DNA of 63,680 nucleotides, the filler included, from Lenisia limosa (lineage: Eukaryota; Protista; Breviatea), in assembly GCA_001655205.1 (NCBI GenBank). It is 16 parts of 16 records of this genome, joined end to end, with 100 filler letters (N's around TTAATTAATTAA, not from the genome) between each part and the next. Parts side by side here need not be neighbours in the genome. Positions count along the whole stretch, not along the records: positions 4,482 to 10,957 come from LPNZ01006849.1; 15 more parts are not named here. One strand, 5' to 3'. Below, in pieces: positions 4,482-34,222 of this stretch. Below the pieces are notes generated by a model. The model had not been told where the DNA came from and did not search any database. It was given only the letters and a program-made list of their open reading frames with translations. Both the position numbers and the translations under genes were made by a program. The first letter of the stretch is position 1; every line of letters begins with the position of its first letter.

Positions 4482-4880
4482 CAGCATCGCATCCATCAAA
4501 GCTGGATGGACAGAGCGTAGAAGGAGGGAAAATGGAAAATGTGAAACAACTAACAACAAAACAAGTCATGCTCATATCATATTCTTTTTTTTGAGTTCAA
4601 CTTCCAACTTCACAATTCAATCCTGCCAAATACATGTAGAATAAGCCCAGCGATGTTACTCAAGTTAAGCACCAAAGGACAGCTCATCCCTTTGTCACAA
4701 CCACACTGATTGTCAATATCGTACCAGACATTTGCAGTTCAACCATTGCAGTTTATTTCACAAGACAAAAGCAGAACCATGAACTTTTGAAGTTGCTTTC
4801 CCTTGATTTTAAACCCCTTCCCATCCCAAATTCTGTTTAATGTGAAAATTCTTAAAGAACAGCCCCCCATCACCCTCTTT

Positions 4881-5580
4881 TCACTGCCTTCGCAAGAATG
4901 ATATGGTACTATCTTGGAATGCAGCGGGCACACTAACCTCTAACTCCGATGCGTTTTCGGCGGCTTTACGTTCGAATTCTTCGAGCTTCTCTTGCCAGAG
5001 GGCGGTGAGGCTCTCTTTCTCCCTTTCATACGTCTGATCTAGCTCATCCTGAAGAAGAGAGTTCGAATTAGCAACTTCTTCTTCCCTCACAACTTCAATC
5101 CTAGATATATCAGCAAGGTTCACTGTCAAAACGACCATTTTACTCGAAACTGACAAAGAAAAGCCTTCAACTGACTTTTTCTTCAAGGCTACAGTCTTGT
5201 CGTGGATACCTTGTGCTTCAACATAACGTTTTGCCGACTCAGCTTCGATCAACTCGAGTTCCAGGCTTTCACTAAAATACATAAGCGAACAAGACCTTTA
5301 ATTCGCCTACAGCTGGGACTCTAAATCAGCAACGCTGCCCATTGTTTGCTTTCCAGATGTCTAGAAGTCTATTCTGTCTTCAAAAAAATAACAATTACAG
5401 AAACAACTCGGAATATAACTAAAGTATGAGGGCACTATGGTGGCAATATGGGGGTCAAGATGAAACGCCGCTCTTTGTGACAGGAGTGCGGATTGAGGCA
5501 AACGCAGAATCGGATTTTAACCGAGCCTTTTAAGAGAGCTTTGCCTTGCTCTGACTGTCTTATTTCAACACCTAAAGAAT
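4881..5580 (-). CDS. Coiled-coil protein fragment, unidentified
   Basis: E/K-rich heptad-like ORF 4881-5282 (LELIEAESAKRYVEAQ...LWQEKLEEFERKAAENA) plus possible upstream exons. Confidence 0.4.
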
Positions 5581-5927
5581 AAATTTATATTATTAACATT
5601 CTTTAAACAATATTTATTAGCGTAATATCCCCCAACGGTCCAAGTTCTGAAGGTAGAGGCAGAACTTTGTTTCGCTCAGTAAGAATTTCTCAAGACCCTG
5701 GGTCAATTTTGTCTTTTAGGGTCGGGTCGAAAATTTTTGGCAAGAATTCCATTTTTTGTTATGTTTAAAATTTTTGAGTTAATGGATAATGCTACATAAG
5801 TCATAGATTAGCTTCAACAATGGCCCCAAGGGCGGTTATAGATTCGGTCTGATGGGGCTTAACCCTTTTAATGTGCTTGGTTTATGTTAATTGTGAAACC
5901 TATGACTATACACCCTAACTTACCGCA

Positions 5928-8152
5928 GAAAATCCATCGTTTAGTTGCAGAAGGAAACGTTGTTGAGCTTAATGTAGAGCTAGCCTTACATATATCAGAC
6001 ATTGACTCGCCATGGGTAAGTTTGGCTGTTTTTTTAGAACTCTAAAGAGGTCCTCTCTCTGGGACTTGACTAGTTTTCTATGAGAACCTCTTCGTCTCAC
6101 GTTAACATAGAGAGGACTAACGCCACTCACAATTGCGGCCTCGGTCGGTCACTTAGAGACTGTGAAACTTCTTCTTGAAAGGAAGGCAAATGTCGATGGA
6201 TACCCTTCAAGCTCACAGTCTACTGTAAGTGTTGAACAGTATCATGAACTTTATGCTCACAAGTCCCAGTTTCTAGGGGTTGTTTTCCCACCAATTGTCT
6301 GTGCTGCAGGCCAGGGTCACCTTGGAGTCGTACAAACGCTTCTACAGGCTGGAGCTAACATAAACCTGCAGACAGCCCTTCTCCAGGTTTGGAATGAGTT
6401 AATTTTTTTTTGGTGTTCTTTGTTTTGTGAAGGGCACAGATCTTTTAAGACAGAAATTATGGATATAACTGCCATAGCAATGTCGCAAATCCTCAGTTGG
6501 TATCCAATCTCTTCGGCTCATGTCGCCAAAGGGAGCCTCACAGGTCAATGCCTTGTGGATGGCAGCAGTTAGGGGACAGATAGAGGTTGCAGACTTCCTC
6601 CTGCAGAATGGAGCGAGCTTTCCTTCTACAGAGAGAGGGACCTCTCCTCTGACTGCGGCAGTGGATAATGAGTGTCTTCCGGCCGTCGAATATCTAATAC
6701 CGAAGTCCTCCATGGAAATAAGGGTAAGTGTCCCAAGAATGCCGCTCTCTTGCAGTTTCCTTCTTGATCACTTCCCGGTTTCCTTTTTTGAAAGTCACCC
6801 TGCAGACCCAAGCCCTGAATCTTGCACTTCACAAGTCCTTCCATGAGGCTTCCCTGTTGTTAGCAAGACAGACGCCGATTCCCAAGGTTGGCTCTGTTTT
6901 GGGTCGCGATTTGTGATGATTCCCTCATATCTCGTGCATCCTTTGACATTCTTTCGTGTTGGTTTCCTCCGTAGCATCAAGTATTTTTCCTTATTCCTCC
7001 ATATCTAAGGCCACTGGGGATAATAATGGTTATTCATTGCGGTGCTCAAAGCCACCTCATTGCTTTGTCATCTTCGGTTAGAAGCCCTGTTCCAGGGCCG
7101 AAAAAATATTGCATTTCAATTGAGACACTACTCCCCCGTTTGAATGTAGCACAAGTGTAAAATGGATATTTATTCTCAAATGAAGCCATAAATGTCCTTG
7201 GGTTCTATTTTTTTTTTTTATTTGAGTTAATTTTTTTTGGACTTGAGGTCTGGCAGAACACCCTAAGTTCTTGTACTTTATGACAAGCTCAATCTGGGCT
7301 TATTTCCACAGATACAAAGTGATTTATTGGACAAGCTGGATTTGATTTCTCATTTCTGTGTTGTCCACAAACCAAGTATCTAGCTTTGTTTTACCCCGGA
7401 CAGGGCCTGGTAGCAGAGTACGCACAAGACGAGTTCAGGATGGAGTACTTACTACTCACACTGGGTGCTTCACCGAATGACAGAGATGCGGTATGTTGTT
7501 GTTCTTATTTGGTGTTACTTTCTTCTTTCAATCGTTGATTCTTTTTTACTTTTTTTTTTTCTTTTTTTCTTCTTCTTTTCGTCTGTGTTCTTCATTTGCA
7601 ACTGGGGTGATTCCTTAAAAAGTCGAAAGTGTTCCCTCGATTCCACATCTTTCCTGCTGTACATTCGCATCACGCCCTCCAGGACGGCACGCCCATTCTC
7701 AACATTATCCTGGCTGAGATCACTACGCGGCCGAAGCAGGTCGAAAACGTCTACAGGCGCGCCACAATGCTTCTTGACGCCGGTGCCAAGCCCAGTCTCA
7801 GGGATGCTGTGGGGGGGGGGGGGNNNNNNNNNNNNNNNNNNNNNNNNNNNNNNNNNNNNNNNNNNNNNNNNNNNNNNNNNNNNNNNNNNNNNNNNNNNNN
7901 CTAATCACGATTAGGGTAATGTATGCATAGTGAGAGTTTTGTAGCTTTAATGATGATCAAAGAGCAATTCTCTATGATATCTTTATCCACAAGAGAAAGC
8001 TTGGAGTTTGATATGAAGCTTGCTAACTTCTCAGAGAGGCAACTCGGCATTCATGACGGCATGCAATAACACCGGGCTTCACTCATGTCTGGTCCGGTTC
8101 ACTTCCCTTCTTCTGTCCTATGACAAACACGCCGCCGCTGTTCCCAATTTGG
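5928..8152 (+). CDS. Ankyrin-repeat protein (multi-exon)
   Basis: Exons encode GLTPLTIAASVGHLETVKLLLERKANVD, PPIVCAAGQGHLGVVQTLLQAGANIN, NALWMAAVRGQIEVADFLLQNGA, TSPLTAAVDNECLPAVEYLI and RGNSAFMTACNN. Confidence 0.9.
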
Positions 8153-8614
8153 TAAGTGCTGTTATTCTTGGAGGCAGGGGTGTTTGGTTGCCAAATGTGT
8201 GGGGTCTTCTTGTGTGTGAGAAAGCACATAATTCCTAGCCTTTTTTAAGCCTTTTTTAACCACTAGCTTGGCGAACATGCTCATATTGCGTGTCCTCTCC
8301 CCGATTCTCTTATAAGGAAAGTCAAGGCCCAAGTACGTGTGGGTTTTTTTTTTATAAAAATAATTATCTTCAAAAACACTCATGTCAAACCAGGTTCGAG
8401 ATTCGCACGCGCGGATCCCCCAGGATTATTTGTCAAATTTAGAGGCAGTACCAGCTCTAGAGAAGGTAGTAGGGATGGTGTGGACGGCTTCTTCTGTTAT
8501 TAGTATGACACCATATTGTCTTAGGTTTTATTCTCCACCACTGAGAGCGATATAAATACTATCACATATGATGCAATGAACTCTAGAATGGTAATATGCT
8601 ATATAACCCCTCGT

Positions 8615-10190
8615 TCAGAAGAAGGCAGTGAAGCGTCCCCGTATGGATCCGAGTTTATCACCCCCATTAATGCCGCCCACCCCCGGACAAGTCTCCATTA
8701 AGTCCCCGACACTCACTTCGGTAAGATGTGGGAACTGAAAGAAAAATTGGGTTTTGTGCAAATAGTTTTCGAAGTTACCGTGTCTGAAATGAGCGGATCT
8801 GATTTGTAATTTGCCTCTTATCAATCTCAATTAACCATCGCAATTTCTTTGTATTTTTATTTTTTATTTTTTTATTTCCATTTTCACTTTCATAAATTTT
8901 CCAATTTTACTGTNNNNNNNNNNNNNNNNNNNNNNNNNNNNNNNNNNNNNNNNNNNNNNNNNNNNNNNNNNNNNNNNNNNNNNNNNNNNNNNNNNNNNNN
9001 NNNNNNNNNNNNGGTGAAGGTCAGCCTTGGCCTTGGCGAAATCCCGGACCAGTCTTCCAGTGCCGGGTCCCTACCTTTTGCCCAGGTCTGCTGCGGCTTA
9101 CTGAAAGACTACATTAATAAATCCTGAGATACAAGCAATTGATGGATAGAGTAAATTGTTTTTTTTTGTTTTGTTTTTTTGGTGTTGTTTTTTTTTTGTT
9201 TCATTCATTTTCATTATTCACGGGATACGGTGCTGCAGAAGCGACTGGCCTGGACTTTGTTTGTTTTGCTGTTCATAACCCTCGTGTGTTGGCAGCCAAC
9301 AGAGTTGATTTTGGGCTTTATTTATTTCATTTTCATTACCCCCCCCCCCCAGCTGCCAAACATGGNNNNNNNNNNNNNNNNNNNNNNNNNNNNNNNNNNN
9401 NNNNNNNNNNNNNNNNNNNNNNNNNNNNNNNNNNNNNNNNNNNNNNNNNNNNNNNNNNNNNNNNNNNNNNNNNATGCCCAAATTCTCCAGCAACAGCAGG
9501 AACTTCTACAACAGCAACAACTCATTAACCACCTTCTCCAACAACAACAACAGCAGCAGCCCGCTGCTGCAGCCCCCCAAGCCAATCCTTTCCAACAGCA
9601 ATCCCCTTTATTGCACCACCCTGTCCCCTCAGCTGCCCCCCTCATGCAGCCGCCTTCACTCNNNNNNNNNNNNNNNNNNNNNNNNNNNNNNNNNNNNNNN
9701 NNNNNNNNNNNNNNNNNNNNNNNNNNNNNNNNNNNNNNNNNNNNNNNNNNNNNNNNNNNNNNNNNNNNNNNNNNNNNNNNNNNNNNNNNNNNNNNNNNNN
9801 NNNNNNNNNNNNNNNNNNNNNNNNNNNNNNNNNNNNNNNNNNNNNNNNNNNNNNTAAAAGATTCTCCATCTCTAACTTTTAAATAAAGTGAAATTTTATT
9901 GTCCAAAAAGGAAGACTGCCAGGTTTCATTTAATTTTTATTCAGGGGCCCATCACTTTGCTAACGGAATTCAGTCGAATGCGTCTGTCCACTCCACTGCC
10001 ACCACCGCCTTCGACCAGTTGTCACAATCTAACATGGTGGGCTGCACTCTTTTGGTTCGACACTAAATGCAAGAAATACTGGCAAAATCAAGAGCAATAA
10101 TCTAAACGTCTTCCAGGGGGGATCTGTATCCTCAGCTCCAACTGCGACCTTCGAGAATATGCCAAATAATTTCGTTTGTGGGGTATTTAC
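8615..10190 (+). CDS. Pro/Ser/Gln-rich low-complexity exons, probably the C-terminal part of the upstream ankyrin gene
   Basis: Same contig and strand; exons KKAVKRPRMDPSLSPPLMPPTPG, QILQQQQELLQQQQLINHLLQQQQQQQPAAAAP and AHHFANGIQSNASVHST. The join to the ankyrin part is inferred. Confidence 0.55.
9245..9352 (+). repeat. Intron-3'-end repeat family, representative copy (Introner-like candidate)
   Basis: CCCTCGTGTGTTGGCAGCCAACAGAGTTGATTTTGGGCTTT...poly-C-AG; related copies occur in more than 12 introns of unrelated genes. Confidence 0.8.
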
Positions 10191-11439
10191 TTACGTACGT
10201 ATATCATATAGTATACGTATACGTATACTAGGACATGTACACTATACTGTATATACTCGAGGTCCTAAACTATATTGAGAAAAATGCGAGCATAAACTGA
10301 AAAAAATTGCGCGAGCGTGGCGCTAAAAAAATTAAATTTCCACGATAAAGTGCTGATCTTGCAAAAAACAATTTTTTGAAAGGTTATATTTTTCTTTGTT
10401 TTCCTTCATAAACAAATTAAGTGTGTAGATCTCAGAAATATATTACTGTTTTGAAGGGGAATAGCTGATTTGGCGACCGTAAATAATTAACGACATTAAT
10501 TCGATATAGCGACATAATTTTGGACCTTGAGCATATAGTATGTATGATGCTTGACTACTTTGTATGCTTTGGTAAAAACAGTGTCATCCAATTACTTTAG
10601 CCTCATTAATATCATATGATATAGCTTTTATAATTATAAGCCAAATCAATACAATGTATACATCAATACATTTGGTCTTAAAATGTATGTTTTACCAAAA
10701 GTTAAAAATTTTGAGCTTTGTATATCGGAAACACTGACCCTTCAAAGGAAGCTTTCAAAGCCCCTTGCCTTCAAGACCAAACAGTTCATATGGGACAGGT
10801 GAAGGGGAGGTATTCTTGATAATCGGAAAACAGAATTGAAAGATGGGGATGGTTGGTATTTCATTACACCAATGTTCACCATCAGTGGTACCTTTGTTTG
10901 AGTGTTGATTTTTTTTATTACTTTTTTTTTATACATATTTTCCCTTTTTCCTTCCCCNNNNNNNNNNNNNNNNNNNNNNNNNNNNNNNNNNNNNNNNNNN
11001 NTTAATTAATTAANNNNNNNNNNNNNNNNNNNNNNNNNNNNNNNNNNNNNNNNNNNNTCCTCTCTAAATGTTGACATACATCCGAGGCCCTATATGTTAA
11101 TTGTTTTCAAAAAAAAAGTGAAGCCTACTCGGTATCAGCTGTATCTTCAATTCTATCAGAAAAAAATTGTTGAAAAAAATTCAAACTGTAACAAAAGGGG
11201 AAAACAAAAGAAAAAAACTGGTAAAAAGACGAATGAACTGGACTGAACTGAACTGATATTTTTGGAAAATGAAAATCCCAAAATAGTGTAATTTTTTGAA
11301 AATCTCAACTAAAACGGTAAAAAAATCCATTTGTATTGATAAAAATAGAAAAAGATTGACGAAAAATCATAAATGACACGGTTTCTCATAAATGACACGG
11401 TTTCCGTGCAGCAGCATATGATATATCATATCATATAGT

Positions 11440-12070
11440 ATATATATATGATCGATATGAAAAAAGTCATATTTACTATATGACATTTGCCATATTTGGG
11501 CTTCATATGCGTCATATTTTTGACATTCCGGTGACGTGTCACCAAAGTTTCCTTTTTTTTTTTTTCCCCTCACTTATTACCCTGTCCCCCTTGTCCCGTT
11601 AAGGATCATGATATTTGCATAAACTATGAAATTTGCGGCCGTTCACTATTCTATTTTTTTTTTGTAATTCTGGTTTTCTCAAGTAATTCTGCTTTTTTTT
11701 TATTATTTTTTTTTTATTTACGAGATTCACTCTTTTTGGGTAAAACAAGTCTAAAATAGGTAGATATATTGTGTTTGTTTCGAAAAATTAGAAGTGAAAT
11801 GATCTTGACGTGATTTGTTTTCTACTTCATTTCAAAAGTTGGTTTCAAATTCTTGTCAAAGTAAAATATTTGAGATACATAGAGCTCTAAATATTAAGCC
11901 CAAATTTTAAACTTTGAATTCCTTTTGAAGCCTATTCTAGATAACAAAAAAATAAATGCAGAATTACCGAAACAAATCAGAATTTTGAACGGATATTTGT
12001 TTGAAAATGTGATCGTTTTGAAAAAATATGATGAATTTCCCGAAAAATATGACATTTATAATTTCCCTAG
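11440..12070. repeat. Dispersed repeat shared with 23880-24135; this copy is interrupted by ~380 bp
   Basis: 11480-11630 and 12010-12070 align to 23915-24060 and 24085-24135 (CATATTTGGGCxTCATATGCGTCATATTTTTGACATTCCG...AAGGATCATGATATTTGCATAAA). Confidence 0.8.
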
Positions 12071-12122
12071 GATAATAAGTAATGATATAACATTATTATT
12101 ACCCTGCCTATCCTCTCTCTAG

Positions 12123-15100
12123 GTTGTTGTAGCACCGCTTCTTCGTCGCCTTGTGCATCGAGAAACTCAGGAGTTCATTCAAAGTAGGCTGTATTCTTAT
12201 TTTAAGCTGTGACTAGCTCATATAGTCATATTGTCAACTCTTTAGAATGATTCCCTTTTTTCATTTGATTTACTCACAAAGCCACCCTCCGTGAGATGAT
12301 CCGCACATGCGCCAAGAAGAAGAAGTCGCTTCAACTTCCCATTCTCCTTCAGCTCCGATTCCTTGCTGCTGATTGGGCCTCTGTACGTACTTTTCCTGTT
12401 CTTTTCCTTTTTCATTTAACCCGATTAGAATTTACAAGTGTCTATTTTTACAAACTACTTTTTTTTTTGTTTCACAGTGAAGGGAAATGAACCTGCAGAT
12501 CCTGCAGTTTCAGGCCTCAAGGACCCCAAAGTATGCCTTGCCTCATTTGCTTGCTTTTCATGTTTTTCTTTCCTTACATGAAACATTTGCAGGAAGGGTT
12601 CCACACTCATCTCCCCACCCGTGAGACTGGTCCGTCTGAAACACAGCTTTATCTCATTCGCGCTATTGTCCACTCTCTCGCCACTGCCAAGAAAAGCGAC
12701 TTGAAAGGCAGGCGTTCTGCGCATGTAATTGTATTGCTGTTTTTTTCGTTTATAATTTTATTTTTTTTGTAATTCAAGTGTTTTTTAACGTTCAAGGGTC
12801 GCACGTAAAGGAGTTGGATGCCTTTTACAAACGCTCAGTTCACTACAAGTACCTGCTCAACTACATGGGCACGCTTAACGTAAGTTTGTGTACAGCTCTT
12901 AGTGTCTGACCTCTCAGGAGTGTAACGATCTTGGTAACCTGTGGTATAGAGAGTTCTACCTTGAGCTCAGCAAGAGGCTCCAATTCCCAATCGAAATGTC
13001 CCTGCCTTGGATTGTCACCGAGCAGATTGTCTCCAGAAAAACCTCTGCCCTTATGGAGTCGGCTCCGTCTTGATTTTAACACTATATAGATACGTTCTTT
13101 ATCCCCTGGATCTTTACAACGATGCTGCTCATTTGGCGCTCTACAACCTGAAACAGCAGTTCTTGTTCAACGAAATTGAGGTAAAGCAGTTACAACATAT
13201 TATTTTTTTGTTTTGTTTTTAGTCAGATATTTTTTACACCCCAGGCTGAGGTCAACCTGTGCTTTGACCAGTTAATCTTCAAACTATCGGACTCAGTCTT
13301 TGCCGCATACAAGACCAAGGTTGCCGCGCTCCAACTTGACACTCGCTACAAGGTTGGTTGAGACATTCAATTCAAGCTATGCTATCTCATTGGTTTCTGT
13401 ATCGATTGAGCTCTATTCTTCTGATCATCAGCACATGCTTTCTGAAACAGAAACCGGACGGTTCCATCCCGTCAAGTCGCGTTACGAGGTCCTCTTTCAG
13501 CAAAGGCATTTCAACCTATTGGGACGCTCGCTCAACCTCAACCATCTCATTGCCCAGGTCAGTCAACAGATTGATTTTGGTAACTATCCTGACTTACCAC
13601 TCCAGCGTCTGAATACACATATTTCGTCTAATCTTGAGATGGCCCTCAGACGATTTGAAGGAAATGATCTCACCGCGCTCCCCGAGCTTCTGTCTCTGAT
13701 CAACAACATTAAGGCCACACATGCTGAACTTTCCAAGGTGCCATCATTATGTTGCCCTCTTACCACATGTAGCACTTCCAGTTACATCCTTTCGATGATA
13801 TGTGGACTGAAGCAACCGAAAGCTCTTCTGCCACTTCCTATCGGTATGCCCCCACCACCCCCATCCCGTTCTGTCTCTCTTTTCTATGCTCTCACTCCGC
13901 AGTGATCGTATCATTCTTCATTGTATCCCTGAAATGGTGTTTGATCTTCTCCCCAACTTCGCCTACAATAGGTTGGCTACCATCCATATCATTTTCATCT
14001 TATTTAATTACCATTCATTCTCAAGAAGAAACTCTATCTCCCCCCCCCCCCTTTTGTTTTNNNNNNNNNNNNNNNNNNNNNNNNNNNNNNNNNNNNNNNN
14101 NNNNNNNNNNNNNNNNNNNNNNNNNNNNNNNNNNNNNNNNNNNNNNNNNNNNNNNNNNNNNNNNNNNNNNNNNNNNNNNNNNNNNNNNNNNNNNNNNNNN
14201 NNNNNNNNNNNNNNNNNNNNNNNNNNNNNNNNNNNNNNNNNNNNNNNNNNNNNNNNNNNNNATGTACGGCTCCAAAGCCCTCTCAATGGCGTATCATGCT
14301 GCCTTCCAACTAAGACGGTTTGTCATCAAAACAGTTACTATTACAATAGTTTGACCTGCTGACTCGTTGAGAGAATGATTGGCTTTTGTATGTACATACA
14401 GCATGGATAATAAAAAAATTAGCTATCAATGTGCTCGAGCTTTACATACATCACTCTAGATCATACTTCGGTCGTGAGCATATTCAAGCTCTTGTGGAGC
14501 TCTGTGGTCTCCCTGGCCTTTCACTCATCATCAATGAAGTCATGAAGGCGCTCGATTCTCGGTGTGCATAGGGTCTTCTTAATGTGTTTTTCAATTGAAC
14601 GCATGCTGACCTATCAGAGTCGACTCCTCTCTTCTGCCCTACTTTGAGCAGCTTCTCCAAGGAATGCCTGGAAACTCAAAGGTCTGTTATTTAGAACTCT
14701 TTGATGAAGGAAATTGAACTCAATTATTTGACTTGATACTAAAAACTAAATGTTGCAGCTGCCTGCTCATGATTACGGACCAGACGCTTGCAGTGCGTAT
14801 TTCCAGGCCAAACTCAAGCCAATCCTCACATACCCTGAAGTCCGCTCCGGCGTCTTCCAGGTTTGTTGTTGTACATCTATGAGTCTTTGGTTCTGTTTCA
14901 CCATGAATGATTGAGTAGGCACTCCGCGAACTCGGTAACACTATGGCCTTCTGCCAACTTATTGATGCCGAACTTTCTGTTAAGAAGGGTTGCGAGGCAT
15001 ACACAGCAGTGGCATTCAATGGCTCCAAGGTTTGTTGATAGCCGTAATATTTTCTAGCATAACACACCTAACCCTTAGGTGGCAAACGGCCCTGAACCGT

Positions 15101-15625
15101 CGAAGCAGCTGCCGGACATTGTTGATGGCCTTGCCACCGCCATCAAGCAGCTCGGAACCTCACTTGTGCCTTCTGCTGTTGTTGATGGACTCAAGGTTTG
15201 ACTCACCTTTAGTCCTTTTTCTTCTTTGGTATGTTGTAAACAACAAAGCGTACCAAGCTCATTTTTAGGTGCGTGCTGAGAGAGCAATCCAGCAAAGCGC
15301 GTCGAGTGCAGATTCTGGTTTGTTGTCTTACATCGTCACAGATGGTCACAGATCCAGGTGCTACTATTCTGCCGTTCGTCTACAGCCGCATTAAAGACAT
15401 GATTGTGCGTCACAAGGCCAAGTTGGACCCCCCTAGTCCCACTGGTGAGCGTTGATCAGTTTTTTCCTTTTACTGTCTTGTGACATTGGTCCTACGTAAG
15501 ATCTCACCCCCAGGTATCATTTCAATCGAGACCTCGGAACAGTTCTACCGCTTGTGGTCAGCCCTTCTTTTCTTCCTCTGCTCACAGCCTGATGACAACG
15601 ATATGTTCGACTTTGGAGACGGACT
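12123..15625 (+). CDS. CYFIP: CYFIP/Sra-1/PIR121 (WAVE regulatory complex subunit), internal multi-exon fragment with both ends cut off
   Basis: Spliced exons give [96 protein letters not shown] and QFYRLWSAL...FGDG, all hallmark CYFIP motifs. Confidence 0.97.
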
Positions 15626-15725
15626 NNNNNNNNNNNNNNNNNNNNNNNNNNNNNNNNNNNNNNNNNNNNTTAATTAATTAANNNNNNNNNNNNNNNNNNN
15701 NNNNNNNNNNNNNNNNNNNNNNNNN

Positions 15726-18700
15726 AACACCCCTTCATTGGTTGCTTAATTCCCTCTCATGCGCCCAGAACACCCCTTCATTGGTCGGCCTACAACGGCG
15801 ATTCCGAGTTTTGCGATTTCCTTCTTGAGCTCCATGCCGACCCGAACTCACACGACCAAGGCGGCCGCACACCCCTGATATGTGGGCGGGGGGCAAGTTG
15901 TTATACGCTGATATGTGTGTGGGGGTACTTTCTTCCTCTGTTTATAAAATGTACTTCCAATTTTCCACCAGTTTAATTTATCCGAATACTACGATATTCC
16001 CCCCCCCCCCCNNNNNNNNNNNNNNNNNNNNNNNNNNNNNNNNNNNNNNNNNNNNNNNNNNNNNNNNNNNNNNNNNNNNNNNNNNNNNNNNNNNNNNNNN
16101 NNNNNNNNNNNNNNNNNNNNNNNNNNNNNNNNNNNNNNNNNNNNNNNNNNNNNNNNNNNNNNNNNNNNNNNNNNNNNNNNNNNNNNNNNNNNNNNNNNNN
16201 NNNNNNNNNNNNNNNNNNNNNNNNNNNNCGGTTCGGTCAAGGTAGTTGAGAACCTGCTCAAACATGACGCGTCGCCGCTGCTCATCGACAACGAAGGAAT
16301 GCGTGCTGTCGACCACTCCAAATACCACAAGTTCAAAGAGATCACCGTGATCCTTAAGAAGGCCATGCAGAGGGTTGGCGGGGCATTGTATGTCGAAGAG
16401 CATGTTTTATCCTGCAGAGGCTTTTCAAATTCTGCTTTCTTCTGTTCCCCATATTCTTCACCATATTGACTCATACATACTACTTCTTCGCTTCAGTCTT
16501 AACCAACACCTCACATCCGTCCAGATTCGGACGCACTCCTCCCAAGACGGGCCAATTGACATGGAAATGATGTCATCAAGCACCCCGGCTGGAAGTCCTA
16601 GGGTGGGCGAGAGGGGTATTGAAGGCGTTGAATCATTTTCCTCTGTTTAGAACTTCTTGACTGAAATTAGACCAAGTTTTCCTTGTTTTAAAGCAATTTT
16701 TTCCAGTTTGAGATCATCTTTCCCCTCTTTCCCCTGTTTAACGTTTAACGAACTCCAGAGCCGGGTTGATCCGTCGGATGAAATTTGNNNNNNNNNNNNN
16801 NNNNNNNNNNNNNNNNNNNNNNNNNNNNNNNNNNNNNNNNNNNNNNNNNNNNNNNNNNNNNNNNNNNNNNNNNNCTTTATTGTTATCTAGAGCCTCACTT
16901 CGGATCAAAAAAGACCGGTAAAATATCGATAGTTTTCGACCATTTATCTATAAATCTTTTCGAACCGAAGGGAAGCCTTAGTCATCTCATATTAGAAAAA
17001 GATCTGGACTAGAGCTTCATTTCATTTTCAACGGGGGATAGCGCTGTATGTATTTTGCGGGTCCCGCCACTTTTTGGGACGAAAGATTGCATGTCTTATT
17101 GCTCAGGAAAGGGACGCGGCAATTGAAGAGCTGCAGCAGACAAAAGCCATGATGTTGAGAGCTCAGGTGGGTGGCATTAGAACAAATAGACGGCCAATAA
17201 GGATATTTCATAGCCTTTGGCTTCAAAGAGAGCGAACAGTGGTTTGGAATCCATATCATCAAAATTGTAGGTACATTACTGATGGTGGTGGTGATAATGC
17301 AATCATGTGGTGGCTGTCATGCCATTTTGGGTTTTCATGAAGTAGTGCAGATTTGACCTTTTCAGAAGCAGATCTCAGTGACATCGGACGAAAGTGACCA
17401 GAAAACACTGTGGGGCTTTATTTCGTCTGTAGATGACAAGAATGAATATAATATGAGATCCAAAAAAAATAAATAATAATATTGGGATACCATAAACAAA
17501 TATTAGCATACACTGACCTTTCAGTGAGCTGATGGCAGAGCTTGAGGGTTTCAAGGGGGACGCGCATGAACTGCGCATTGTCGTGGAGGAATTGGTGGGT
17601 GGTATTATTCGTTTTTTTAATACCCCTTTTCGATTCTCAACACAGTTAGTTCTTTTCTTTTGTATTTCAATTCTCAACACAGTTCTTTTCTTTTGTCTGT
17701 TCTCCTGAGTTTACCAGATTTACAGAGTTGATTTGGGCTTTTTTGTTTCATAAATTTTCCAATTAACCCCCCAAGAAACGCAGCAACGCCGAATGGGCAC
17801 GAAAAGATGCGCGCGCGCGTTTGTGGTCTGGCAGCTCCTCAATATCGAAACAGGTGGGCGGATGGAGCGGATTTTGATGACATTGAAGGCTGGAATGATT
17901 TGCATAAATTCTACCTGTTTGTCTAATTATTCACTCTGATTATCACCCCAAGTACCTCTGTTATTGCCTGTAACTTTTGATACACTATTTTGCCTCATAT
18001 TTAACTTTCCTCATCTCATGCTTTGAACCTCATATTTTACTGTAACTGTGATACATGGTGACCGGGATAAGTCTTGACCTATTTTCCATGATATACACAG
18101 TGACCAACATAAGTCTTGACCTATTTTCCATGGGAAATCATTTAGCAAATCGGTGAAGACTTATCCCATGTGCCTCGTATTTGACATTTCAGGCGTCATC
18201 CAATGGAGAAGAGGACCCTGTTGTTCTCCGTTCCAAGGTTGGAGGCTATGTTTACCCCTTCTCTACTCCCTGCTACTCCAATGCTCTTCCACTCCCTGCT
18301 ACTCCAATGCTCTTCCACTCCCTGCTACTCCAATGCTATTCCACTTCCTGCTACTCCAATGCTATTCCACTTCCTGCTACTCCAATGCTATTCCACTTCC
18401 TGCTAATGCTATTCCACTCCCTGCTACTCCAATGCTATTCTGATTTTCTTACTCTGAACTCCTTTCTCTATTGTACTGTATGATTTAATTGCTCTTCTCA
18501 TACCCCGCGCAGATTACACAGCTTCAGCACAAGTTGGCTTCTGCGGTGCAATCAAGGGAGAAAACCGAGAGAGAGCTTGAGGATATTAAGGTGGGGGACG
18601 GGGCACTGGGAGCAGAACAATATGGTTGATGAGTCGTCTCCTTTTCTTCCGATTGTGGTAACTTCCTCATTTGGTAACTTCATAGATGGCGTCACGAAGC

Positions 18701-20341
18701 TCCTCACAGTCCCTTACCCACCGATCCACAAGCGGACGAGATAGCCGGGCCAGCCAGGGCAGTCTCGGAGGAATTCCTATTGAGCAGTCCAGCCAAGCGC
18801 AGGAGGAGAAGTACATAGCCCTTACGAAGAAGGTTGGTGGTGCTCTTTTGGAAGTTGTCTTGGTTGCTGCAAATCTTGATATAGACTATTTTTTTTGGTA
18901 TGTATAAAACCTCATCTGTGTTCGAAGTGTTTAACCAACGTCTTTATTATTCTTTTTCTTCCTTTGTCCCCATTGCTACCCCTCCCCTCTCCCCGTTTTT
19001 TTTTGTAAACGTATATTTAAAAAGGCGAATCGAAACTATAAGCAATAAAGGAGGACAAGACAGTTTAGTACACTGGAGTGATGGGATTGGCCTTGTTTGT
19101 TTGCCTTTTTCAACCATCGTGTGTTGTCAGTCAACAGAGTTGATTTGGGTTTTTTTTCTCCTCATAAAATTTTCAATTTTACCCCCCCCCCCCACCACCC
19201 AGGTGGCCCACCTTGAAGCCAGACTTGCCTCCGAAATCGCCTCAAGAGAGCGCCTCATTGCTGAGGAGACTGAAAAGGTGCACGCGGCGGCGGTGGTTGT
19301 ATTAGGGCTTCACTTCGGTTCGGAAAATACCTGTAAAATATCGAAAATTTTCGAAGACTCATCGAGATATTCGGTCTTTTTTTCGAACCGAAGTGAAGTC
19401 CGGTGGTATTTTAGATTTTGGACTGTATATGAGTTTTTAAAACACATACAATATTTTAGGCTGTTTTTGTGTTATAGATTTTTGTTTGTTACAGTTTAGA
19501 TTGAGGCAGAGGCAGAGGAGGAAATGATGCTGATTAAGAAGGAGATGGAGTATGAGCGGACGCACATCAATTATGAGGTTGGCGCGTGTATCATTAGTCG
19601 AGATGAAGACAATTGTTATATCATTTAGGGATACCATAAACATGGGGATACAATAAACATAATACCTACCAAGAGAGCATCTCTTTTGCATCTTGGAGTA
19701 TCAACAATGCCTTTTCGATAACTTCGAAAATATTTGTTAATTTACTACAGAGTCCCATATTGTTGGCCGTTTTCATAGATTTAGGAGGCCTCGGAGGCCT
19801 TGGAGGAGCTAGAGGCGCTGAGGACGGAACTTGCCTCGACCAAGGAGGAAAACTCGACCATGTCAGACCAGCTGCAGATCCTGACTGCTGAGAGGGACCT
19901 GGCTTTGAGCAGAAACGAGGAAGTGGGAGGGAGGGACTTGGCTTTGAGCAGAAACGAGGAAGTGGGAGAGAGGGACTTGGCTTTGAGCGGAAACGAGGAA
20001 GTGGGAGGGAGGGACTTGGCTTTGAGCGGAAACGAGGAAGTGGGAGGGAGGGCTTCCTACGCTTCCAAAAAAGACAAGTAAAATATCGATATTTATCGAG
20101 GTTTCCATTTGTACGGTGGAATTATTGATTTGTTTGTTTTGTTGTTTATCAACTCTCATGTGTTGTCAGCCAACAGAGTTGATCGGGCTAAATTTCCTTC
20201 GTTTTACCCTGCCCTCCGCAGATGGAGAAGGAACTTGATAAGGGCAAACTGTCACTCTTGGAAGCCTCTCTTGCTAAGGCAAAGGACGAAAACACCACTC
20301 TCCGATCCAACCACATCGCTAACCTCAAGAAGCAGTCAGAG
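15726..20341 (+). CDS. Ankyrin-repeat + long coiled-coil protein (ankycorbin/UACA-like architecture), partial
   Basis: RTPLHWSAYNGDSEFCDFLLELHADPNSHDQGGRTPLI and GSVKVVENLLKHDASPL, followed by many short heptad exons (ITQLQHKLAS, VAHLEARLASEIASRERL, LEELEALRTELASTKEE, MEKELDKGKLSLLEASL). Confidence 0.8.
16888..16980. mobile_element. hAT-type MITE copy (intronic)
   Basis: TAGAGCCTCACTTCGGATCAAAAAAGAC...CGAACCGAAGGGAAGCCTTA. Confidence 0.8.
18265..18437. repeat. 26-bp intronic minisatellite (CTGCTACTCCAATGCTCTTCCACTCC), ~6.5 copies
   Basis: Period read directly; it explains the three overlapping open frames in the ORF track. Confidence 0.9.
19303..19400. mobile_element. hAT-type MITE copy (intronic)
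   Basis: TAGGGCTTCACTTCGGTTCGG...CGAACCGAAGTGAAGTCC; flanks GGTTGTAT/GGTGGTAT. Confidence 0.85.
19890..20052 (+). repeat. 39-bp in-frame tandem repeat (ERDLALSRNEEVG x4) spanning an exon/intron donor
   Basis: GAA|GTGGGA recurs at 19923, 19962, 20001 and 20040. Confidence 0.9.
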
Positions 20342-27182: not shown

Positions 27183-28905
27183 TAGAATACTGCGACAAAA
27201 AGTCCATGAAAATGACGGTGAGGCGGCAATCACAGCTGTTTATCACCACTTGAATTTCTCCCTGGGGGGGGGGGAGAGATGAGGGGGGACGGAAAAACTA
27301 GGGCTCTGTGTAATTAATTGACAAATCAATTTCAAAATTTGAAGTTGGACATAGTGTAACGAGAACCCTATCCCAAACACTTTAATTTTTACTTTTGTCA
27401 ATTAATTTCCTCAAAAAAAATTGATTACACTGATCCCAAAACAATCCATTATCAACCTAAAAACCACCCAACCGAAAGAAGATCAGAAACACCGGGGTTG
27501 AGCTCGACAATTCGAGGGTCATTCCAGGTAACTAAGAAGCCGAGGTAGATACTGTTAACGAGGGGGAGCGGGTAAAAAGGGAAAATGGACTGAAACAAAA
27601 AAAGGCCTAAGATCAACTGTGGCTAACAACACACGAGGTTTAACCCCCCTCCCCACTCCCTCTCCAAGAGGGAAGGGAAAGGGAAAGGGGGGGAGGGTTA
27701 AGAAAAGTTCGTATCATTTTTCTGTTTCGTATGATGTGATTTCTTTTGTTCTCTTGTTTCTTTGAATTACAATTCAATTGATAATGGGTAAAAAAATGAA
27801 CGCTATGCCAAAAAAAGAGTGTCAAAACCAAAGAGGAAAGAACAAGGAATTATCATTGTTTGTAAACTACCCTCTTACTCCGCAAGGATCTCAAAAGACA
27901 GGTTGAGACCACTTACCTGGAAAATGAGAGAATAGAGAGCGCAAGGATTCATCGAGGATGAAATTATTCAGGATTAAATGAGGATTTATCACGAATTTAC
28001 GAGGGACTATCTTGGGTTTTAAAATTTTTCACACATTTAAGACAAACGGAGGATTTATCGAGAGTTATCGAGGATTTATTTCAAAATTATTTATCGATGA
28101 TTTATCGACCCCCCCCNNNNNNNNNNNNNNNNNNNNNNNNNNNNNNNNNNNNNNNNNNNNNNNNNNNNNNNNNNNNNNNNNGAGGTGCGCTGACAGCCGA
28201 AATATCGGTATTAGGGGGGCCTTCCGTTACATATGCGTCCAATCTAACGAGTAAGTGGAAATAGGAAAAAATCAACTCAAATAAAATAAAAATGTATCTT
28301 TTTTTGTACACGATGAAATCCAATATCGAATGGAAAAATTGTCAAAATGAAACCGCACTTCTGAAGGGAGATTTCACTATCTGGAGTAGCCTCAGTAGTA
28401 ATCGTGTCAAAATCCGAGTCAATAAACCCCTGAATGTGTAAGTCAAACGAAACAAAGCCCCCCTCCCACGCACCAAAAACAATAGACACCCAAACGAATA
28501 CCATAACTAATTTACTCATTCAGAATTTCATATATGCATATATTGTCTAAGGCTTCACTCTGAATAAGTCATATATCGATAGTTTACCGAACTTGTTCGT
28601 ACCTGGGTGAAGCCCTAAATATAGACCGTCCACATACCATAACTAATATAGCTTGGTTTCTGATTGAGACTTGGCTCATTACTGAGGCTAAAAGGATTAG
28701 ACCGATGTCTAGGGCTTCCTTACACTCATCATTACCACCACACATCATCATTATTATTATTATCATCATCATCAATATCATCAAAATCATCAGCATCACC
28801 ACATTCATCATAATCATCGCGACAGCCCTGCATACTTCCAATTGTGAGTTTCCCGGGTATCGACGTGGTGTTACTGCATTTGGCCGGATACCACGCTACT
28901 AGATT
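27183..28905 (-). CDS. PstS-like (type 2 periplasmic-binding-protein fold) domain protein, multi-exon, partial
   Basis: Exons join as VSGLNLSFEILAD|IYLGFLVTWNDPRIVELNP|GEIQVVINSCDCRLTVIFMDFLSQ, matching PstS L.L....LADIFLGKI..WND..I..LNPG...VV.R.D.SGT..FT.YL. Confidence 0.75.
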
Positions 28906-32200: not shown

Positions 32201-34222
32201 CTATGTCTATTGAAAGCGACATTTTCTCTGCGGGACTGATTCTGCTTCAACTATGGACCGGACAAGTGAGAACTGAACTGTTATATTTCTGTTGCAAGTA
32301 TTAGTTTTTGTGTTATAATTGTACATTTTACCTCCCCCCCTAGGAGATTCACCCGACAATCAGTCGCCTCGCAGTTGTTCAAGGCCATAGGGAGGGAACG
32401 CTTGTGGTGGGCGGTGGTAGTAATGGCGCTCTTATTTGGGGATAGTAACTTGACTTTGATGCTATTATGAACTCTTGTTGTCTTATTCTGAGGGTTATAA
32501 TATTACAATGAAGTGGTGATGGTGTTTAAATGAAGGCATGAGAAATTATAAAAGCGCATTTGTGGATTATATATATAACTGTCTTTAGGCTGACATTCCC
32601 TCAACAATCCATCCTATTGTGGCGTCCATCATTGCCCGCTGCTTATCTTACACTCCTTCAAACCGCCCATGCGCATCTGAAATCGTGGAAGCGCTGAGAC
32701 CACTTAAGCCCTCAGCTGGGGTGGCCCCTGATCATGTGGGGGTATTAGTGATATGCTAGAAGTAAAGAACAGGGGGTGGGGGTTAGGGGAATTGGAGTGT
32801 CTGTTCACCTTTTTGGTGATCATTTCATTATTTTTTATGATCTGAAGTATAAACTGCTTCAGCCTGATACTTTCATCAGTATCCCTATAAACATGCCATC
32901 GACATGCACCACCATTTGACCATCTGTAGTCTCGCCAAGCTGACCTGCTTAACTCGGTGCTTCCGCCACATATTGCAAAACAACTCATTTTGGTGGGAAG
33001 GGGGGGGGGGTCACTTTTGTTTTTCAATTCCAATATTATGAGGAAGGCGAGCGAGGTACTCCTTTTTCATTTTTCATTACATTTCATATTATGTAGGGCC
33101 AAGAAGTTCGGCCCGAATCATTCGATGATGTTACAGTCATGTTTACCGATATTGTCGGTATGCTTAGATTATTTGCGGATACTGTTGATATGCTTATATG
33201 ATTTTGGTTCACAGGTGATGGTGAATTTTTGTTCATTACTTTCCTGTTTCATTTCTGAACCAATAACCGTTGCAACATAGTCGGTATTTTCTCACCCTTT
33301 TCACTTTGGTCTGACAACACTGAATGTCGATAGTCATCGATCAGTTGATATTTTACCAGTCTTTTCCGTAACGAAGAGAATTCTTATTCGCCTCCCCAAC
33401 AGAGTTGATTTTGGTTCCTTTTTATTTGTTTCATACAATTACAATTTTACCCTCCNNNNNNNNNNNNNNNNNNNNNNNNNNNNNNNNNNNNNNNNNNNNN
33501 NNNNNNNNNNNNNNNNNNNNNNNNNNNNNNNNNNNNNNNNNNNNNNNNNNNNNNNNNNNNNNNNNNNNNNNNNNNNNNNNNNNNNNNNNNNNNNNNNNNN
33601 NNNNNNNGGTATTGTGATAATGAAGTATGACATGATATTTCCAGGAATTTGTGGATATTAGACAACCTTTTTGAATGTAATGGCAAATAAAGTCACTATT
33701 ATTGCTTAAATGGATTGGCTTTGCTTTGGGTTGTCTGTGAAAGTAATAAACCATCAGTTTAGTTTTGGATACAATCCTCGAATTATCTTTAACTCACCTG
33801 AAAAATTGACCCCAAGTTAAGTTTCATGTTTGAACTATCCAAACCATACAACGCGTATAATAATTAAAAAAGTTGCATTTCATGACAGATCTATTCGAAT
33901 CATATAGGTAGTAGTACGAAATGAACAAATATTAAATGACAATTTTAAATGTTTTACTCCGCAGATTCGCTCTTTGACAAACTCACGAAGAAGTATCAGC
34001 TCTTCAAGGTGGAAACTATCGTTAGAAGGGGGGTTACAGCTTATAAAACATTCCAACTTCAGTTTTCTTAATTGGTATGTACCTTTTGTGATTCCTAAAT
34101 TCACCATTTTCATATTTTCGCCAGCAGTTACACCCTAGGGAGACTCCTATATGGTGGTTGGAGGCCTTGTGGATCAGAACCAGAACCACCCGATGCTCTG
34201 TGCTCTTATGGGCCTTGAAATG
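29242..34222 (+). CDS. Transmembrane protein kinase-class III nucleotide cyclase fusion (receptor guanylyl-cyclase-like order), partial
   Basis: TM YSLILLAFIVILCLAIVLA; kinase VACK, KLKHPNIVQFIG, HCDISPKNILL, KLGDFG, GTPTHVAPEVL, SDIFSAGLIL, RCLS..P..RP; cyclase PESFDDVTVMFTDIV, FDKLTKKYQLFKVETI|GDSYMVVGG. Confidence 0.9.

What the first reader, a model, noticed from the sequence alone, without database searches (positions are those of the whole stretch)
9245..9352. Polarised, hairpin-containing repeat that forms the 3' end of introns in many unrelated genes (Introner-like candidate)
Seen: a ~100-nt family, consensus (C)AACCCTCGTGTGTTGGCAGCCAACAGAGTTGATTTTGGGCTTT..GTTTCATAAATTTTCCAATTTTACCCCCC..AG, with a palindromic core (TGTTGGC-A-GCCAACA inside AACxCTC...GAGTT). 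Plus-strand copies ending at acceptors of plus-strand genes: 9245-9352, 17720-17780, 19085-19202, 20150-20221, 29310-29383, 31630-31718, 45360-45478, 47940-48024, 50370-50420, and running into N masks at 33395-33454 and 43100-43174. Reverse-complement copies lie only in minus-strand genes: 27560-27650, 36275-36360, 41665-41760, 63320-63440. In the 112-nt intron 29272-29383 the repeat makes up most of the intron. By contrast, the hAT MITEs sit at variable intron positions. Known: Introners are transposons that create introns by carrying splice signals. Inference: this is either an old intron-generating element or a structured cis-acting 3' splice-site module.
Basis: partly seen in the sequence, partly recalled or inferred. 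Interest (0 to 1): 0.85.

Follow-up and report, generated by a model that had tools for sequence, protein, structure and literature searches.

The report
Mobile repeat supplying intron 3' ends
A young mobile DNA repeat with roughly ten thousand copies sits, always pointing the same way as the gene, at the very end of introns in many unrelated genes, where its tail and a run of about 12 C's lie just before the splice acceptor; it looks like a retroposon that lands at the ends of existing introns rather than a proven maker of new introns.

Summary
The repeat is real. The window copy spans 9222-9350, 23 nt longer on the 5' side than reported, and is followed by AG at 9351-9352 and an open exon. 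DNA contigs of the source sample pile up on it at about 10,000-17,000 times single-copy depth, while polyA RNA holds almost none.

I recovered the unmasked contig and six more contigs of the same organism (99 kb). They hold 33 copies that are 85-97% identical to a ~150-nt consensus.
- 24 of 29 copies with a complete 3' end finish 0-16 nt before an AG followed by exon-like DNA (control 20%, p about 1e-12).
- All five copies on the window's own contig are sense to their RNA-supported host genes.
- In 150 gene-caller ORFs that read through a copy, Pfam homology (kinesin, guanylate cyclase, ankyrin) starts right after the poly-C/AG.

Copies are 3'-anchored, often 5'-truncated and stacked head-to-tail. 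They lack TIRs and a general TSD signal. Their 5' end never abuts an exon (0 of 38). This fits a poly-C-tailed retroposon inserting at the acceptor end of existing introns. It does not match an Introner that is itself the whole intron, though that reading is not excluded. The hairpin has no structural support.

Unexpectedly, 10-16-nt C runs before AG and G runs after GT are common across these contigs.

The parts
9222..9338 (+). Family A element, body and tail of the window copy (model positions 1-124). It comprises conserved block A (GCTGCAGAAGCGACTGGCCTGG), the palindromic core at 9288-9302 and a T-rich tail ending TTCATTA.
   Evidence: nhmmer hit L001 969-841, which maps to window 9222-9350, 93% identical to the consensus. 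Depth peaks of 631k and 375k in X1.
9339..9350 (+). Poly-C tract (12 C) ending the element; it acts as the pyrimidine tract of the intron.
   Evidence: Sequence; the same length in the independent contig L001. A poly-C follows the tail in 27 of 29 3'-complete copies.
9351..9352 (+). Predicted acceptor AG of intron 11.
   Evidence: The reading frame stays open from 9353 through the N gap, which really holds 33 nt. It is in frame with exon 11 if spliced from 9085. No RNA joint was seen for this weakly expressed gene.
9086..9352 (+). Predicted intron 11 (267 nt). It consists of about 70 nt of unique 5' sequence, an older degenerate copy or tail (about 9160-9221) and the full copy.
   Evidence: All three frames of 9013-9150 hit stops after 9085. 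GT at 9086 gives phase-0 continuity ...LPFAQ|LPNM.... The donor GTCTGC is not RNA-verified.
9160..9221 (+). Older, internally deleted tail-like remnant lying directly 5' of the full copy (ends GTTTCATTCATTTTCATTATTCAC).
   Evidence: Direct repeat D8, 9195-9216 against 9317-9338, 86%. The same tail-before-head arrangement is seen in 12 of 14 full copies.
8882..8913 (+). 5'-truncated (tail-only) family A copy at the end of intron 10. It continues into the N gap as 13 C + AG, then exon 11 (GTAAACTTCG...).
   Evidence: Exact 22-mer of the consensus. nhmmer model positions 97-136. Gap content read from L001. Exon 11 is in frame with exon 10.
8721..8913 (+). Visible part of intron 10 (208 nt in the unmasked contig), donor GTAAGA.
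4482..4552 (-). 5' end of a full minus-strand family A copy (M1), with the older tail upstream of it. The rest of the copy and its acceptor (CCCCAG|GAAAAG) lie just left of the piece, in the 585-nt intron of the minus-strand coiled-coil gene (donor at 4937).
   Evidence: L001 5628-5769. Gene strand fixed by the RNA joints 5100-5174 and 5272-5310.
7809..7823 (+). RNA-supported donor GT followed directly by 13 G.
   Evidence: An X2 RNA contig ends its exon match at 7808. The G13 is confirmed in L001.
7824..7922 (-). Antisense copy of a second family (B) that shares the tail-plus-homopolymer end. It lies tail first immediately after the donor poly-G and is partly hidden by the N gap.
   Evidence: nhmmer family B hit L001 2229-2291, E 5e-16. 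Tail score 46 against a null 99th percentile of 32.

Best explanation
Family A is a young, non-autonomous mobile element of about 150 nt plus a 10-16-nt poly-C end, with roughly 10^4 copies.

Shown:
- Copies lie in the sense orientation at the extreme 3' end of introns of unrelated genes.
- The tail (UUUUAC, which fits the yUnAy branch-site consensus) and the poly-C sit 0-16 nt before the acceptor AG. The element therefore provides the branch-site and pyrimidine region of the intron.
- It is spliced out with the intron, since it is nearly absent from polyA RNA.

Inferred mechanism:
It spreads as a retroposon by target-primed reverse transcription. A G-rich 3' end of nicked DNA (the complement of a C-rich tract just inside an intron border) pairs with the poly-C end of the element RNA. 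The copy is then made from its 3' end inwards. This would explain:
- a constant 3' end and variable 5' truncation;
- head-to-tail stacks, including chimeras with a second family;
- poly-C on both sides of nested copies;
- the rule that the poly-C end always faces the nearest exon (sense copies at acceptors; rare antisense copies right after donors, leaving GT + poly-G).

On this reading it mostly lands in, and lengthens, pre-existing introns and renews their 3' splice region. It does not create introns by itself.
For: Copy number and youth:
- Depth is 10,000-17,000 times single copy.
- There are 33 copies in 99 kb, 85-97% identical to the consensus.

Position:
- 24 of 29 3'-complete copies have an AG within 16 nt of the poly-C, followed by GC-rich DNA with an open frame, against 20% at control sites (p 8e-13).
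- Pfam matches start right after the element: kinesin at residue 63 with the element at 16-62, guanylate cyclase at 49 with the element at 2-47, ankyrin at 164 with the element at 117-160.

Orientation:
- All five copies on the window's contig are sense to genes whose strand is set by RNA joints.
- The DUF676 and ProRS genes are sense to their copies.
- In the 150 ORFs there are 226 sense-frame hits against 2 antisense.
- 14 of 17 neighbouring pairs at least 400 nt apart are co-oriented.

Removed from mRNA:
- RNA depth over the repeat is 33-89, against DNA depth of 10^5-10^6.

Retroposon-like anatomy:
- Model start positions are spread over 1-97 while 29 of 33 copies reach the 3' end.
- 12 of 14 full copies are preceded by another tail or a poly-C.
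- Family B tails are joined to family A heads.
- One non-nested truncated copy has a 9-nt target duplication, TTCAAAATC.
- There are no TIRs.
- A second family shares the tail plus poly-C.
- Antisense copies sit tail first after donors: window 7809 onwards, P0014 and P0098.
Against: - No reverse-transcriptase partner with the same tail was found.
- No Pol III-type head was found (ARAGORN and Rfam negative).
- A poly-C tail is unusual for SINE/LINE elements.
- Target duplications are absent in 27 of 28 copies. Nesting in poly-C could hide them.
- About two thirds of the G/C homopolymers at splice sites have no recognisable element next to them. The homopolymers may therefore have another origin.
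- Some sense copies are preceded by poly-G (L007 5419, L002 9885), which the simple priming model does not predict.
- The 9-mer GTACGCTGG that begins full-length copies is also the donor of intron 12 of the window gene, which hints that the element can supply a 5' splice site.
- No RNA junction was seen for the window intron itself.
- All extra contigs were reached through ORFs that contain a sense copy.
Confidence: 0.55

Rival explanations
1. True Introner. The element inserts into exons and the insertion becomes a new intron. It brings its own 3' splice region and either its own GT (full copies begin GTACGCTGG) or a GT recruited upstream. The unrelated 5' parts and the stacks are later additions.
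For: - Thousands of similar, sense-oriented intronic copies in unrelated genes.
- The element carries a complete 3' splice module.
- Full-length copies start with GT in some cases, and the same 9-mer serves as a donor in the window gene's intron 12.
- Exons are short (about 115 nt), so intron density is high on this contig.
- Introners derived from non-LTR retroelements and from unknown mechanisms are documented (PMC12130899).
Against: - None of 38 examined 5' ends abuts an exon.
- Every full copy sits behind 60-430 nt of other intron sequence.
- Variable spacers of 0-16 nt between the poly-C and the AG look like residues of a host acceptor.
- Tail-only copies cannot have made an intron alone.
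Confidence: 0.2
2. Homopolymer-first model. Long C runs before AG and G runs after GT are a host feature of this genome (expanded splicing signals or a mutational bias). Families A and B are ordinary repeats that merely home to, or recombine at, these tracts by a DNA-level process such as microhomology-mediated repair or gene conversion, not retroposition.
For: - 75 runs of 9-19 nt in 99 kb, 68 of them polarised toward exon-like DNA.
- Only about a third have an A or B tail beside them.
- Poly-C flanks both sides of several copies.
Against: - 3'-anchored 5' truncation, chimeric head-to-tail junctions and one clean 9-nt target duplication point to copying from a 3' end.
- The homopolymer lengths are very uniform (11-14), as expected if they are copied with the element.
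Confidence: 0.15
3. A selected, structured cis-acting RNA module (hairpin plus 3' splice signals) kept similar by function rather than by recent transposition.
For: - Block A and the tail are well conserved.
- The module sits where splice signals are needed.
Against: - No thermodynamic signal (z -0.08).
- No consensus structure or compensatory change; stem variants break pairing.
- Copies lacking the palindrome persist.
- No Rfam family matches.
- Truncated and stacked copies are typical of mobile DNA.
Confidence: 0.04
4. Assembly or sequencing artefact (poly-G/poly-C read tails creating false joins).
For: - The window's N gaps sit at these homopolymers and have the wrong length.
- Both assemblies probably use the same reads.
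Against: - The runs are placed precisely with respect to AG/GT and reading frames.
- An RNA contig splices at the GT + G13 donor.
- The tail-poly-C junction recurs in thousands of contigs.
- The same lengths are found in two assemblies.
Confidence: 0.02

Closest known systems
Introners (intron-generating transposable elements; Micromonas, Aureococcus, dinoflagellates and others; PMC9860276, PMC12130899)
   Same: - High-copy, non-autonomous elements found inside introns of unrelated genes.
- Co-oriented with transcription.
- Carry a splice site. Some Introner families carry only the 3' site; some derive from non-LTR retroelements or unknown mechanisms.
   Different: - Here the element is only the 3' part of the intron, and its 5' end never meets an exon in 38 cases.
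- Copies are stacked and 5'-truncated.
- There are no TIRs and no general TSD signal.
- The end is a 10-16-nt poly-C.
- Intron creation is not shown.
Fungal introner-like elements (PMC3609843)
   Same: Hundreds of similar introns, with degeneration into ordinary introns proposed.
   Different: The fungal elements are whole introns with predicted stable secondary structure. Here there is no structural signal and only the 3' portion of the intron is involved.
SINE / non-LTR retroposons inserted by target-primed reverse transcription; partial-tandem copies of Penelope-like elements (own knowledge)
   Same: - Short and non-coding.
- Constant 3' end with a homopolymer tail, and variable 5' truncation.
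- Head-to-tail chimeras.
- A tail shared between two families.
- One 9-nt target duplication.
   Different: - No tRNA, 7SL or 5S head.
- Poly-C instead of poly-A or a simple repeat.
- No partner found.
- Extreme site preference for the last ~16 nt of introns.
Alu exonisation, where the poly-U of an antisense Alu serves as the pyrimidine tract of a new 3' splice site (own knowledge)
   Same: A retroposon's homopolymer end is used as the pyrimidine tract before an AG.
   Different: Alu acts in antisense, sporadically, and creates alternative exons. Here sense copies serve the constitutive acceptors of roughly 10^4 introns.
Repeat-mediated bridging of intron ends in teleosts ((GT)n/(AC)n at opposite intron ends; own knowledge)
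   Same: Complementary simple sequences near the 5' and 3' ends of introns (G runs after GT, C runs before AG).
   Different: Pairing within one intron was seen only in a few examples here and was not tested statistically.

Membership tests
Introner | Many near-identical copies in introns of unrelated genes | tested here: met
   Depth 10^4 times single copy; 33 copies in 99 kb; 461 ORF hits; hosts include kinesin, guanylate cyclase, ankyrin, DOCK, UNC-93, IQ, ProRS and DUF676 genes.
Introner | Co-orientation with the host gene | tested here: met
   5 of 5 on the RNA-anchored contig; 226 sense against 2 antisense frame hits; 14 of 17 neighbour pairs co-oriented.
Introner | The insertion itself is the intron: both intron borders at or next to the element's ends | tested here: not met
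   The 3' end lies 0-16 nt from the AG in 24 of 29 copies. The 5' end abuts a tail, a poly-C or unique intron DNA, never an exon, in 14 of 14 loci copies and 24 of 24 ORFs.
Introner | Transposition signatures (TIRs and/or TSDs) in the DNA-transposon type | tested here: not met
   No terminal complementarity. Mean flank match is 3.68 against 3.48 +/- 0.37 for permuted pairs. A single 9-nt duplication was found.
Introner | Host intron positions are recent (absent in orthologues of relatives) | not testable with these tools
   No eukaryotic gene structures of relatives were reachable, and the organism is not identified.
Introner | Spliced out of mature mRNA | tested here: inconclusive
   The element is nearly absent from polyA RNA contigs (depth 33-89, against 10^5-10^6 in DNA), and protein homology begins right after the AG. 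No junction read was obtained for an element-bearing intron.
SINE / TPRT retroposon | Constant 3' end with variable 5' truncation | tested here: met
   Model starts at 1-97; 29 of 33 copies reach the 3' end.
SINE / TPRT retroposon | Pol III head derived from tRNA, 7SL or 5S | tested here: not met
   ARAGORN finds only two unrelated tRNA-Cys genes. Rfam E<=1 gives nothing over any copy.
SINE / TPRT retroposon | Target-site duplications | tested here: inconclusive
   1 of 28 copies (L004 6791-6871, 9 nt). The others are nested in poly-C or lie at acceptors.
SINE / TPRT retroposon | 3' tail shared with an autonomous partner | tested here: inconclusive
   The tail plus poly-C is shared with a second non-coding family B. 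No RT-encoding partner was seen in 99 kb or among the Pfam hits.
Known structured RNA (Rfam) | Match to a covariance model | tested here: not met

The most novel reading that the evidence does not exclude
Insertion of short retroposons in this organism is physically aimed at exon-intron borders. Their copied homopolymer ends (about 12 C before AG, about 12 G after GT) have become a widespread component of splice-site definition, marking on the order of a tenth of all splice sites. That would be a splice-site-targeted class of mobile element that continually rebuilds intron ends and may occasionally found new introns.
Probability: 0.25. Interest if true: 0.85.

Novelty: new variant of a known kind. 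Interest (0 to 1): 0.7.

Why it matters
If the picture holds genome-wide, a single young repeat family provides the branch-site and pyrimidine region of roughly ten thousand introns in one eukaryote. Mobile elements would then be remodelling splice signals wholesale, not only creating or disrupting introns.

The strict 'poly-C end faces the exon' rule, together with the abundance of G and C homopolymers just inside intron borders, points to an insertion mechanism or a splicing signal tied to exon-intron boundaries. I could not find such a mechanism or signal described. It offers a tractable system for asking how introns grow, how 3' splice sites turn over, and whether Introner-type intron gain can start from elements that first specialise on existing introns.

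Tried and rejected
- An exact-pattern scan of JGI metagenome contigs with the core motif found nothing.
- ORF look-ups failed at first because the public gene calls on this assembly read TGA as Trp. The route through P0001 worked.
- Self-trained codon model for gene strand: it converged on low-complexity codons and was discarded.
- GC-segment open-frame test for strand: too ambiguous with 100-nt exons.
- Pfam scan of ORFs near copies: only 4 informative hits. The single 'antisense' hit (ankyrin, L001 3553-4011) was a mis-assignment to the neighbouring gene's copy.
- tRNA-like, 5S-like and hammerhead origins were considered and not supported.
- A resemblance, recalled from memory, between the tail-to-head junction and U5 snRNA loop I was not supported by Rfam on loci containing that junction.
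- Lariat or circular-intron templates as the source of the tail-head junctions: the junction sequences (TTTTAC + 0-4 nt or poly-C + ACGCTGG) do not fit a branch-A-to-G or AG-to-GT join.
- Organism identification through ESM Atlas neighbours was uninformative.
- Literature searches for poly-C/poly-G intron ends found no matching description.
Full report
**What is in the window.**
The piece 4482-10957 is eukaryotic, with many short GT-AG introns.
- PolyA RNA contigs (run X2) confirm a minus-strand coiled-coil gene with introns 5100-5174 and 5272-5310.
- They also confirm a plus-strand ankyrin-repeat gene: intron 6225-6269, and an exon 7682-7808 whose donor at 7809 is GT followed by 13 G.
- The finding's segment lies in the last 131 nt of a predicted 267-nt intron (9086-9352).
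- All three frames of the preceding exon close after 9085. GT at 9086 and AG at 9351-9352 give an in-frame join...LPFAQ|LPNM....
- A DNA contig shows that the N gap after 9365 really holds 33 nt that keep the frame open.

**The repeat is real and very abundant.**
- DNA contigs of the source sample (run X1), laid at 80% likeness, pile up over 9158-9357 with a summed depth of 195,620, against about 37 on single-copy flanks.
- Per-site depth is 631,079 at 9254 and 374,837 at 9292. That corresponds to roughly 10,000-17,000 genome equivalents, from 5,117 laid contigs.
- PolyA RNA holds almost none of it (depth 33-89), as expected for sequence that is spliced out.

**Getting more copies.**
- A gene-caller ORF of the window (P0001) led to the unmasked contig of a public metagenome assembly (L001). 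L001 matches the window and extends 762 nt to its left.
- It shows that the gap after 8913 hides 13 C + AG followed by exon 11, in frame with exon 10. The tail-only copy at 8882-8913 therefore also ends at an acceptor.
- Left of the piece, the minus-strand gene carries two reverse-complement copies. Each ends at an acceptor of that gene...CCCCAG|GAAAAG and ...CACGCAG|GGGCG, followed by coiled-coil coding sequence.
- All five copies on this contig are therefore sense to RNA-anchored genes.
- Because the repeat is open in two frames, gene callers read through it. A profile of its frame-a peptide found 461 ORFs at E<=0.001 among 1.84 billion representatives. All 20 that I checked come from the same assembly.
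- Six further contigs were fetched through these ORFs, giving 99.4 kb in all.

**Anatomy of the family.**
- nhmmer finds 33 copies in the 99.4 kb.
- The model consensus is 137 nt. L006:11831-11966 and L003:8271-8403 are 96-97% identical to it. The window copy is 93% identical, and the range is 85-97%.
- Full copies extend 13-15 nt further 5' (ACGCTGGAGTGAT, sometimes preceded by GT).
- 14 copies start at model position 1-2. The others start anywhere from 9 to 97. 29 of 33 reach the 3' end.
- The 3' end is a tail (...TTTCATAAATTTTCCAATTTTAC, often + T) followed by a C run, usually 10-16 nt.
- Of 14 full copies, 12 are preceded directly by another tail or by a poly-C. These are head-to-tail stacks within one intron. 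In 24 ORFs that include the 5' end, the upstream peptide is again tail- or poly-C-derived, twice from a different family.
- There are no terminal inverted repeats. Flank similarity is at the level of permuted pairs. The exception is one truncated copy away from an acceptor (L004 6791-6871), which has a clean 9-nt duplication.
- ARAGORN and Rfam find no tRNA-like head, ribozyme or other known RNA.

**The hairpin.**
- The perfect palindrome is a feature of the window copy only. The family majority has T where the window has G at 9292.
- The copy folds no better than shuffled sequence (z -0.08).
- Sixteen aligned copies give no consensus fold, variants in the stem are not compensated, and two copies lack the region.

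**Position and polarity.**
- In 24 of 29 3'-complete copies an AG lies within 16 nt of the C run (directly after it in 8). It is followed by DNA of about 52% GC with an open frame of at least 72 nt. The same test at random intron-like positions succeeds 20% of the time (p 8e-13).
- Three of the exceptions are followed by another copy or tail that itself ends at an acceptor.
- Among the 150 listed ORFs, Pfam finds kinesin, guanylate cyclase, ankyrin, IQ, DOCK DHR-2, UNC-93 and UBR-type domains in the same frame direction as the element.
- Where coordinates were obtained, the homology begins immediately after the element: kinesin 63-121 after element 16-62, cyclase 49-87 after 2-47, ankyrin 164-193 after 117-160.
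- In the loci, the DUF676 and prolyl-tRNA synthetase genes are sense to their copies.
- Six-frame consensus peptides hit the ORFs 226 times in sense frames and twice in antisense.
- Neighbouring copies at least 400 nt apart are co-oriented in 14 of 17 pairs.
- Caveats: the extra contigs were reached through sense-copy ORFs, strand anchors from homology are few, and no RNA junction was obtained for an element-bearing intron.

**Does it create introns?**
- The 5' end of the element never meets an exon (0 of 38).
- Host introns have 60-430 nt of unrelated or older-copy sequence upstream.
- The spacer between the poly-C and the AG varies (none, TC, TT, TCC, up to 16 nt), which looks like the remains of a host acceptor.
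- Tail-only copies could not have formed an intron alone.
- This fits insertion at the 3' end of existing introns better than de novo intron formation.
- Against a firm verdict: some full copies begin with GT, and the same 9-mer GTACGCTGG is the donor of the window gene's intron 12, which is hidden in the N gap 9662-9854. Ages of the intron positions could not be tested.

**A broader pattern.**
- The 99.4 kb contain 75 G or C homopolymers of 9-19 nt.
- Oriented as poly-C, the DNA downstream is exon-like (GC 0.51) and the DNA upstream is intron-like (GC 0.36) in 68 of 75 (p 1e-11).
- About 38 are poly-C + 0-16 nt + AG|exon. About 20 are the mirror case, exon|GT + 0-9 nt + poly-G.
- Only about a third have a tail of family A or of a second family B next to them.
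- Family B has a different body but shares a related tail and the poly-C.
- Family B occurs in sense at acceptors. It also occurs in antisense, tail first, right after donors, including the RNA-supported donor at window 7809. Two ORFs show antisense family A tails directly after exons.
- The rule is therefore that the homopolymer end of these elements faces the nearest exon.

**Most likely mechanism (inferred).**
A poly-C-ended retroposon is copied from its 3' end after a G-rich DNA end just inside an intron border primes on the poly-C. Reverse transcriptase stalling and template jumps would give the truncations and head-to-tail chimeras, and re-insertion into resident poly-C tracts would give the stacks. 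Sense copies at acceptors survive because they bring a branch-site-like UUUUAC and a pyrimidine tract. Antisense bodies after donors are rare, perhaps because they are selected against.

Weak points are the missing RT partner, the missing Pol III head, the unusual poly-C, the mostly absent target duplications, and the many bare homopolymers.

**Comparison with known systems.**
Introners are documented from many transposon classes, including non-LTR retroelements and unknown types. Some families carry only the 3' splice site. This family works like an Introner in supplying a splice region in sense orientation at genomic scale. It fails the defining test that the insertion is the intron. I file it as a new variant: a splice-acceptor-homing, poly-C-tailed short retroposon. 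The organism could not be identified, and I found no description of such elements or of such homopolymer-flanked splice sites. Prior description elsewhere cannot be excluded.

Noticed in passing
window 7809-7823; L001-L007 generally: G and C homopolymers of 9-19 nt are extremely common (75 in 99 kb). They sit just inside intron borders: poly-C 0-16 nt before AG, poly-G 0-9 nt after GT. Two thirds have no recognisable repeat beside them.
   Followed up: partly
window 7824-7922 (minus), L004:6790-6998, L007:2603-2785: A second repeat family (B, about 110-nt body, ...AATATTCTTCATTGAAATTTCCTTCGTTTTAC + poly-C) shares the tail and homopolymer end with family A. It occurs in sense at acceptors and in antisense right after donors.
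   Followed up: partly
window 10300-10510: Another interspersed repeat (X1 depth up to about 10,000, i.e. a few hundred copies). Its translation (RASLRFEKRLNFSINPRKLSIF-like) recurs in many of the ORFs.
   Followed up: no
window N runs 7824-7900, 8914-9012, 9366-9473, 9662-9854: The N runs begin at or near G/C homopolymers and do not reflect true gap sizes (48, 59, 33 and 106 nt in contig L001). They hide an acceptor, an exon start and a donor.
   Followed up: yes
hidden in window gap 9662-9854 (L001:529-552, minus): The donor of intron 12 reads GTACGCTGG + 15 G. The 9-mer is identical to the start of full-length family A copies, and a tail-like stretch ending CCCCAG follows 20 nt later.
   Followed up: partly
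window 5272-5310: An RNA-supported intron of only 39 nt. Other introns are 45-90 nt and exons average about 115 nt.
   Followed up: no
L001 and the other ENA contigs: The public gene calls on this metagenome assembly read TGA as Trp (P0001 and P0002 run through TGA). This creates artificial ORFs through introns. Those ORFs made the repeat searchable as protein.
   Followed up: yes
L003:166-237 and 718-789: Two tRNA-Cys(GCA) genes 550 nt apart.
   Followed up: no
L004:6091-6289, L007:979-1205, L007:5419-5602, L002:9885-9973: Introns with a G run near the 5' end and a C run further 3' that could pair as a 10-14-bp stem. I did not test whether this occurs more often than chance.
   Followed up: no
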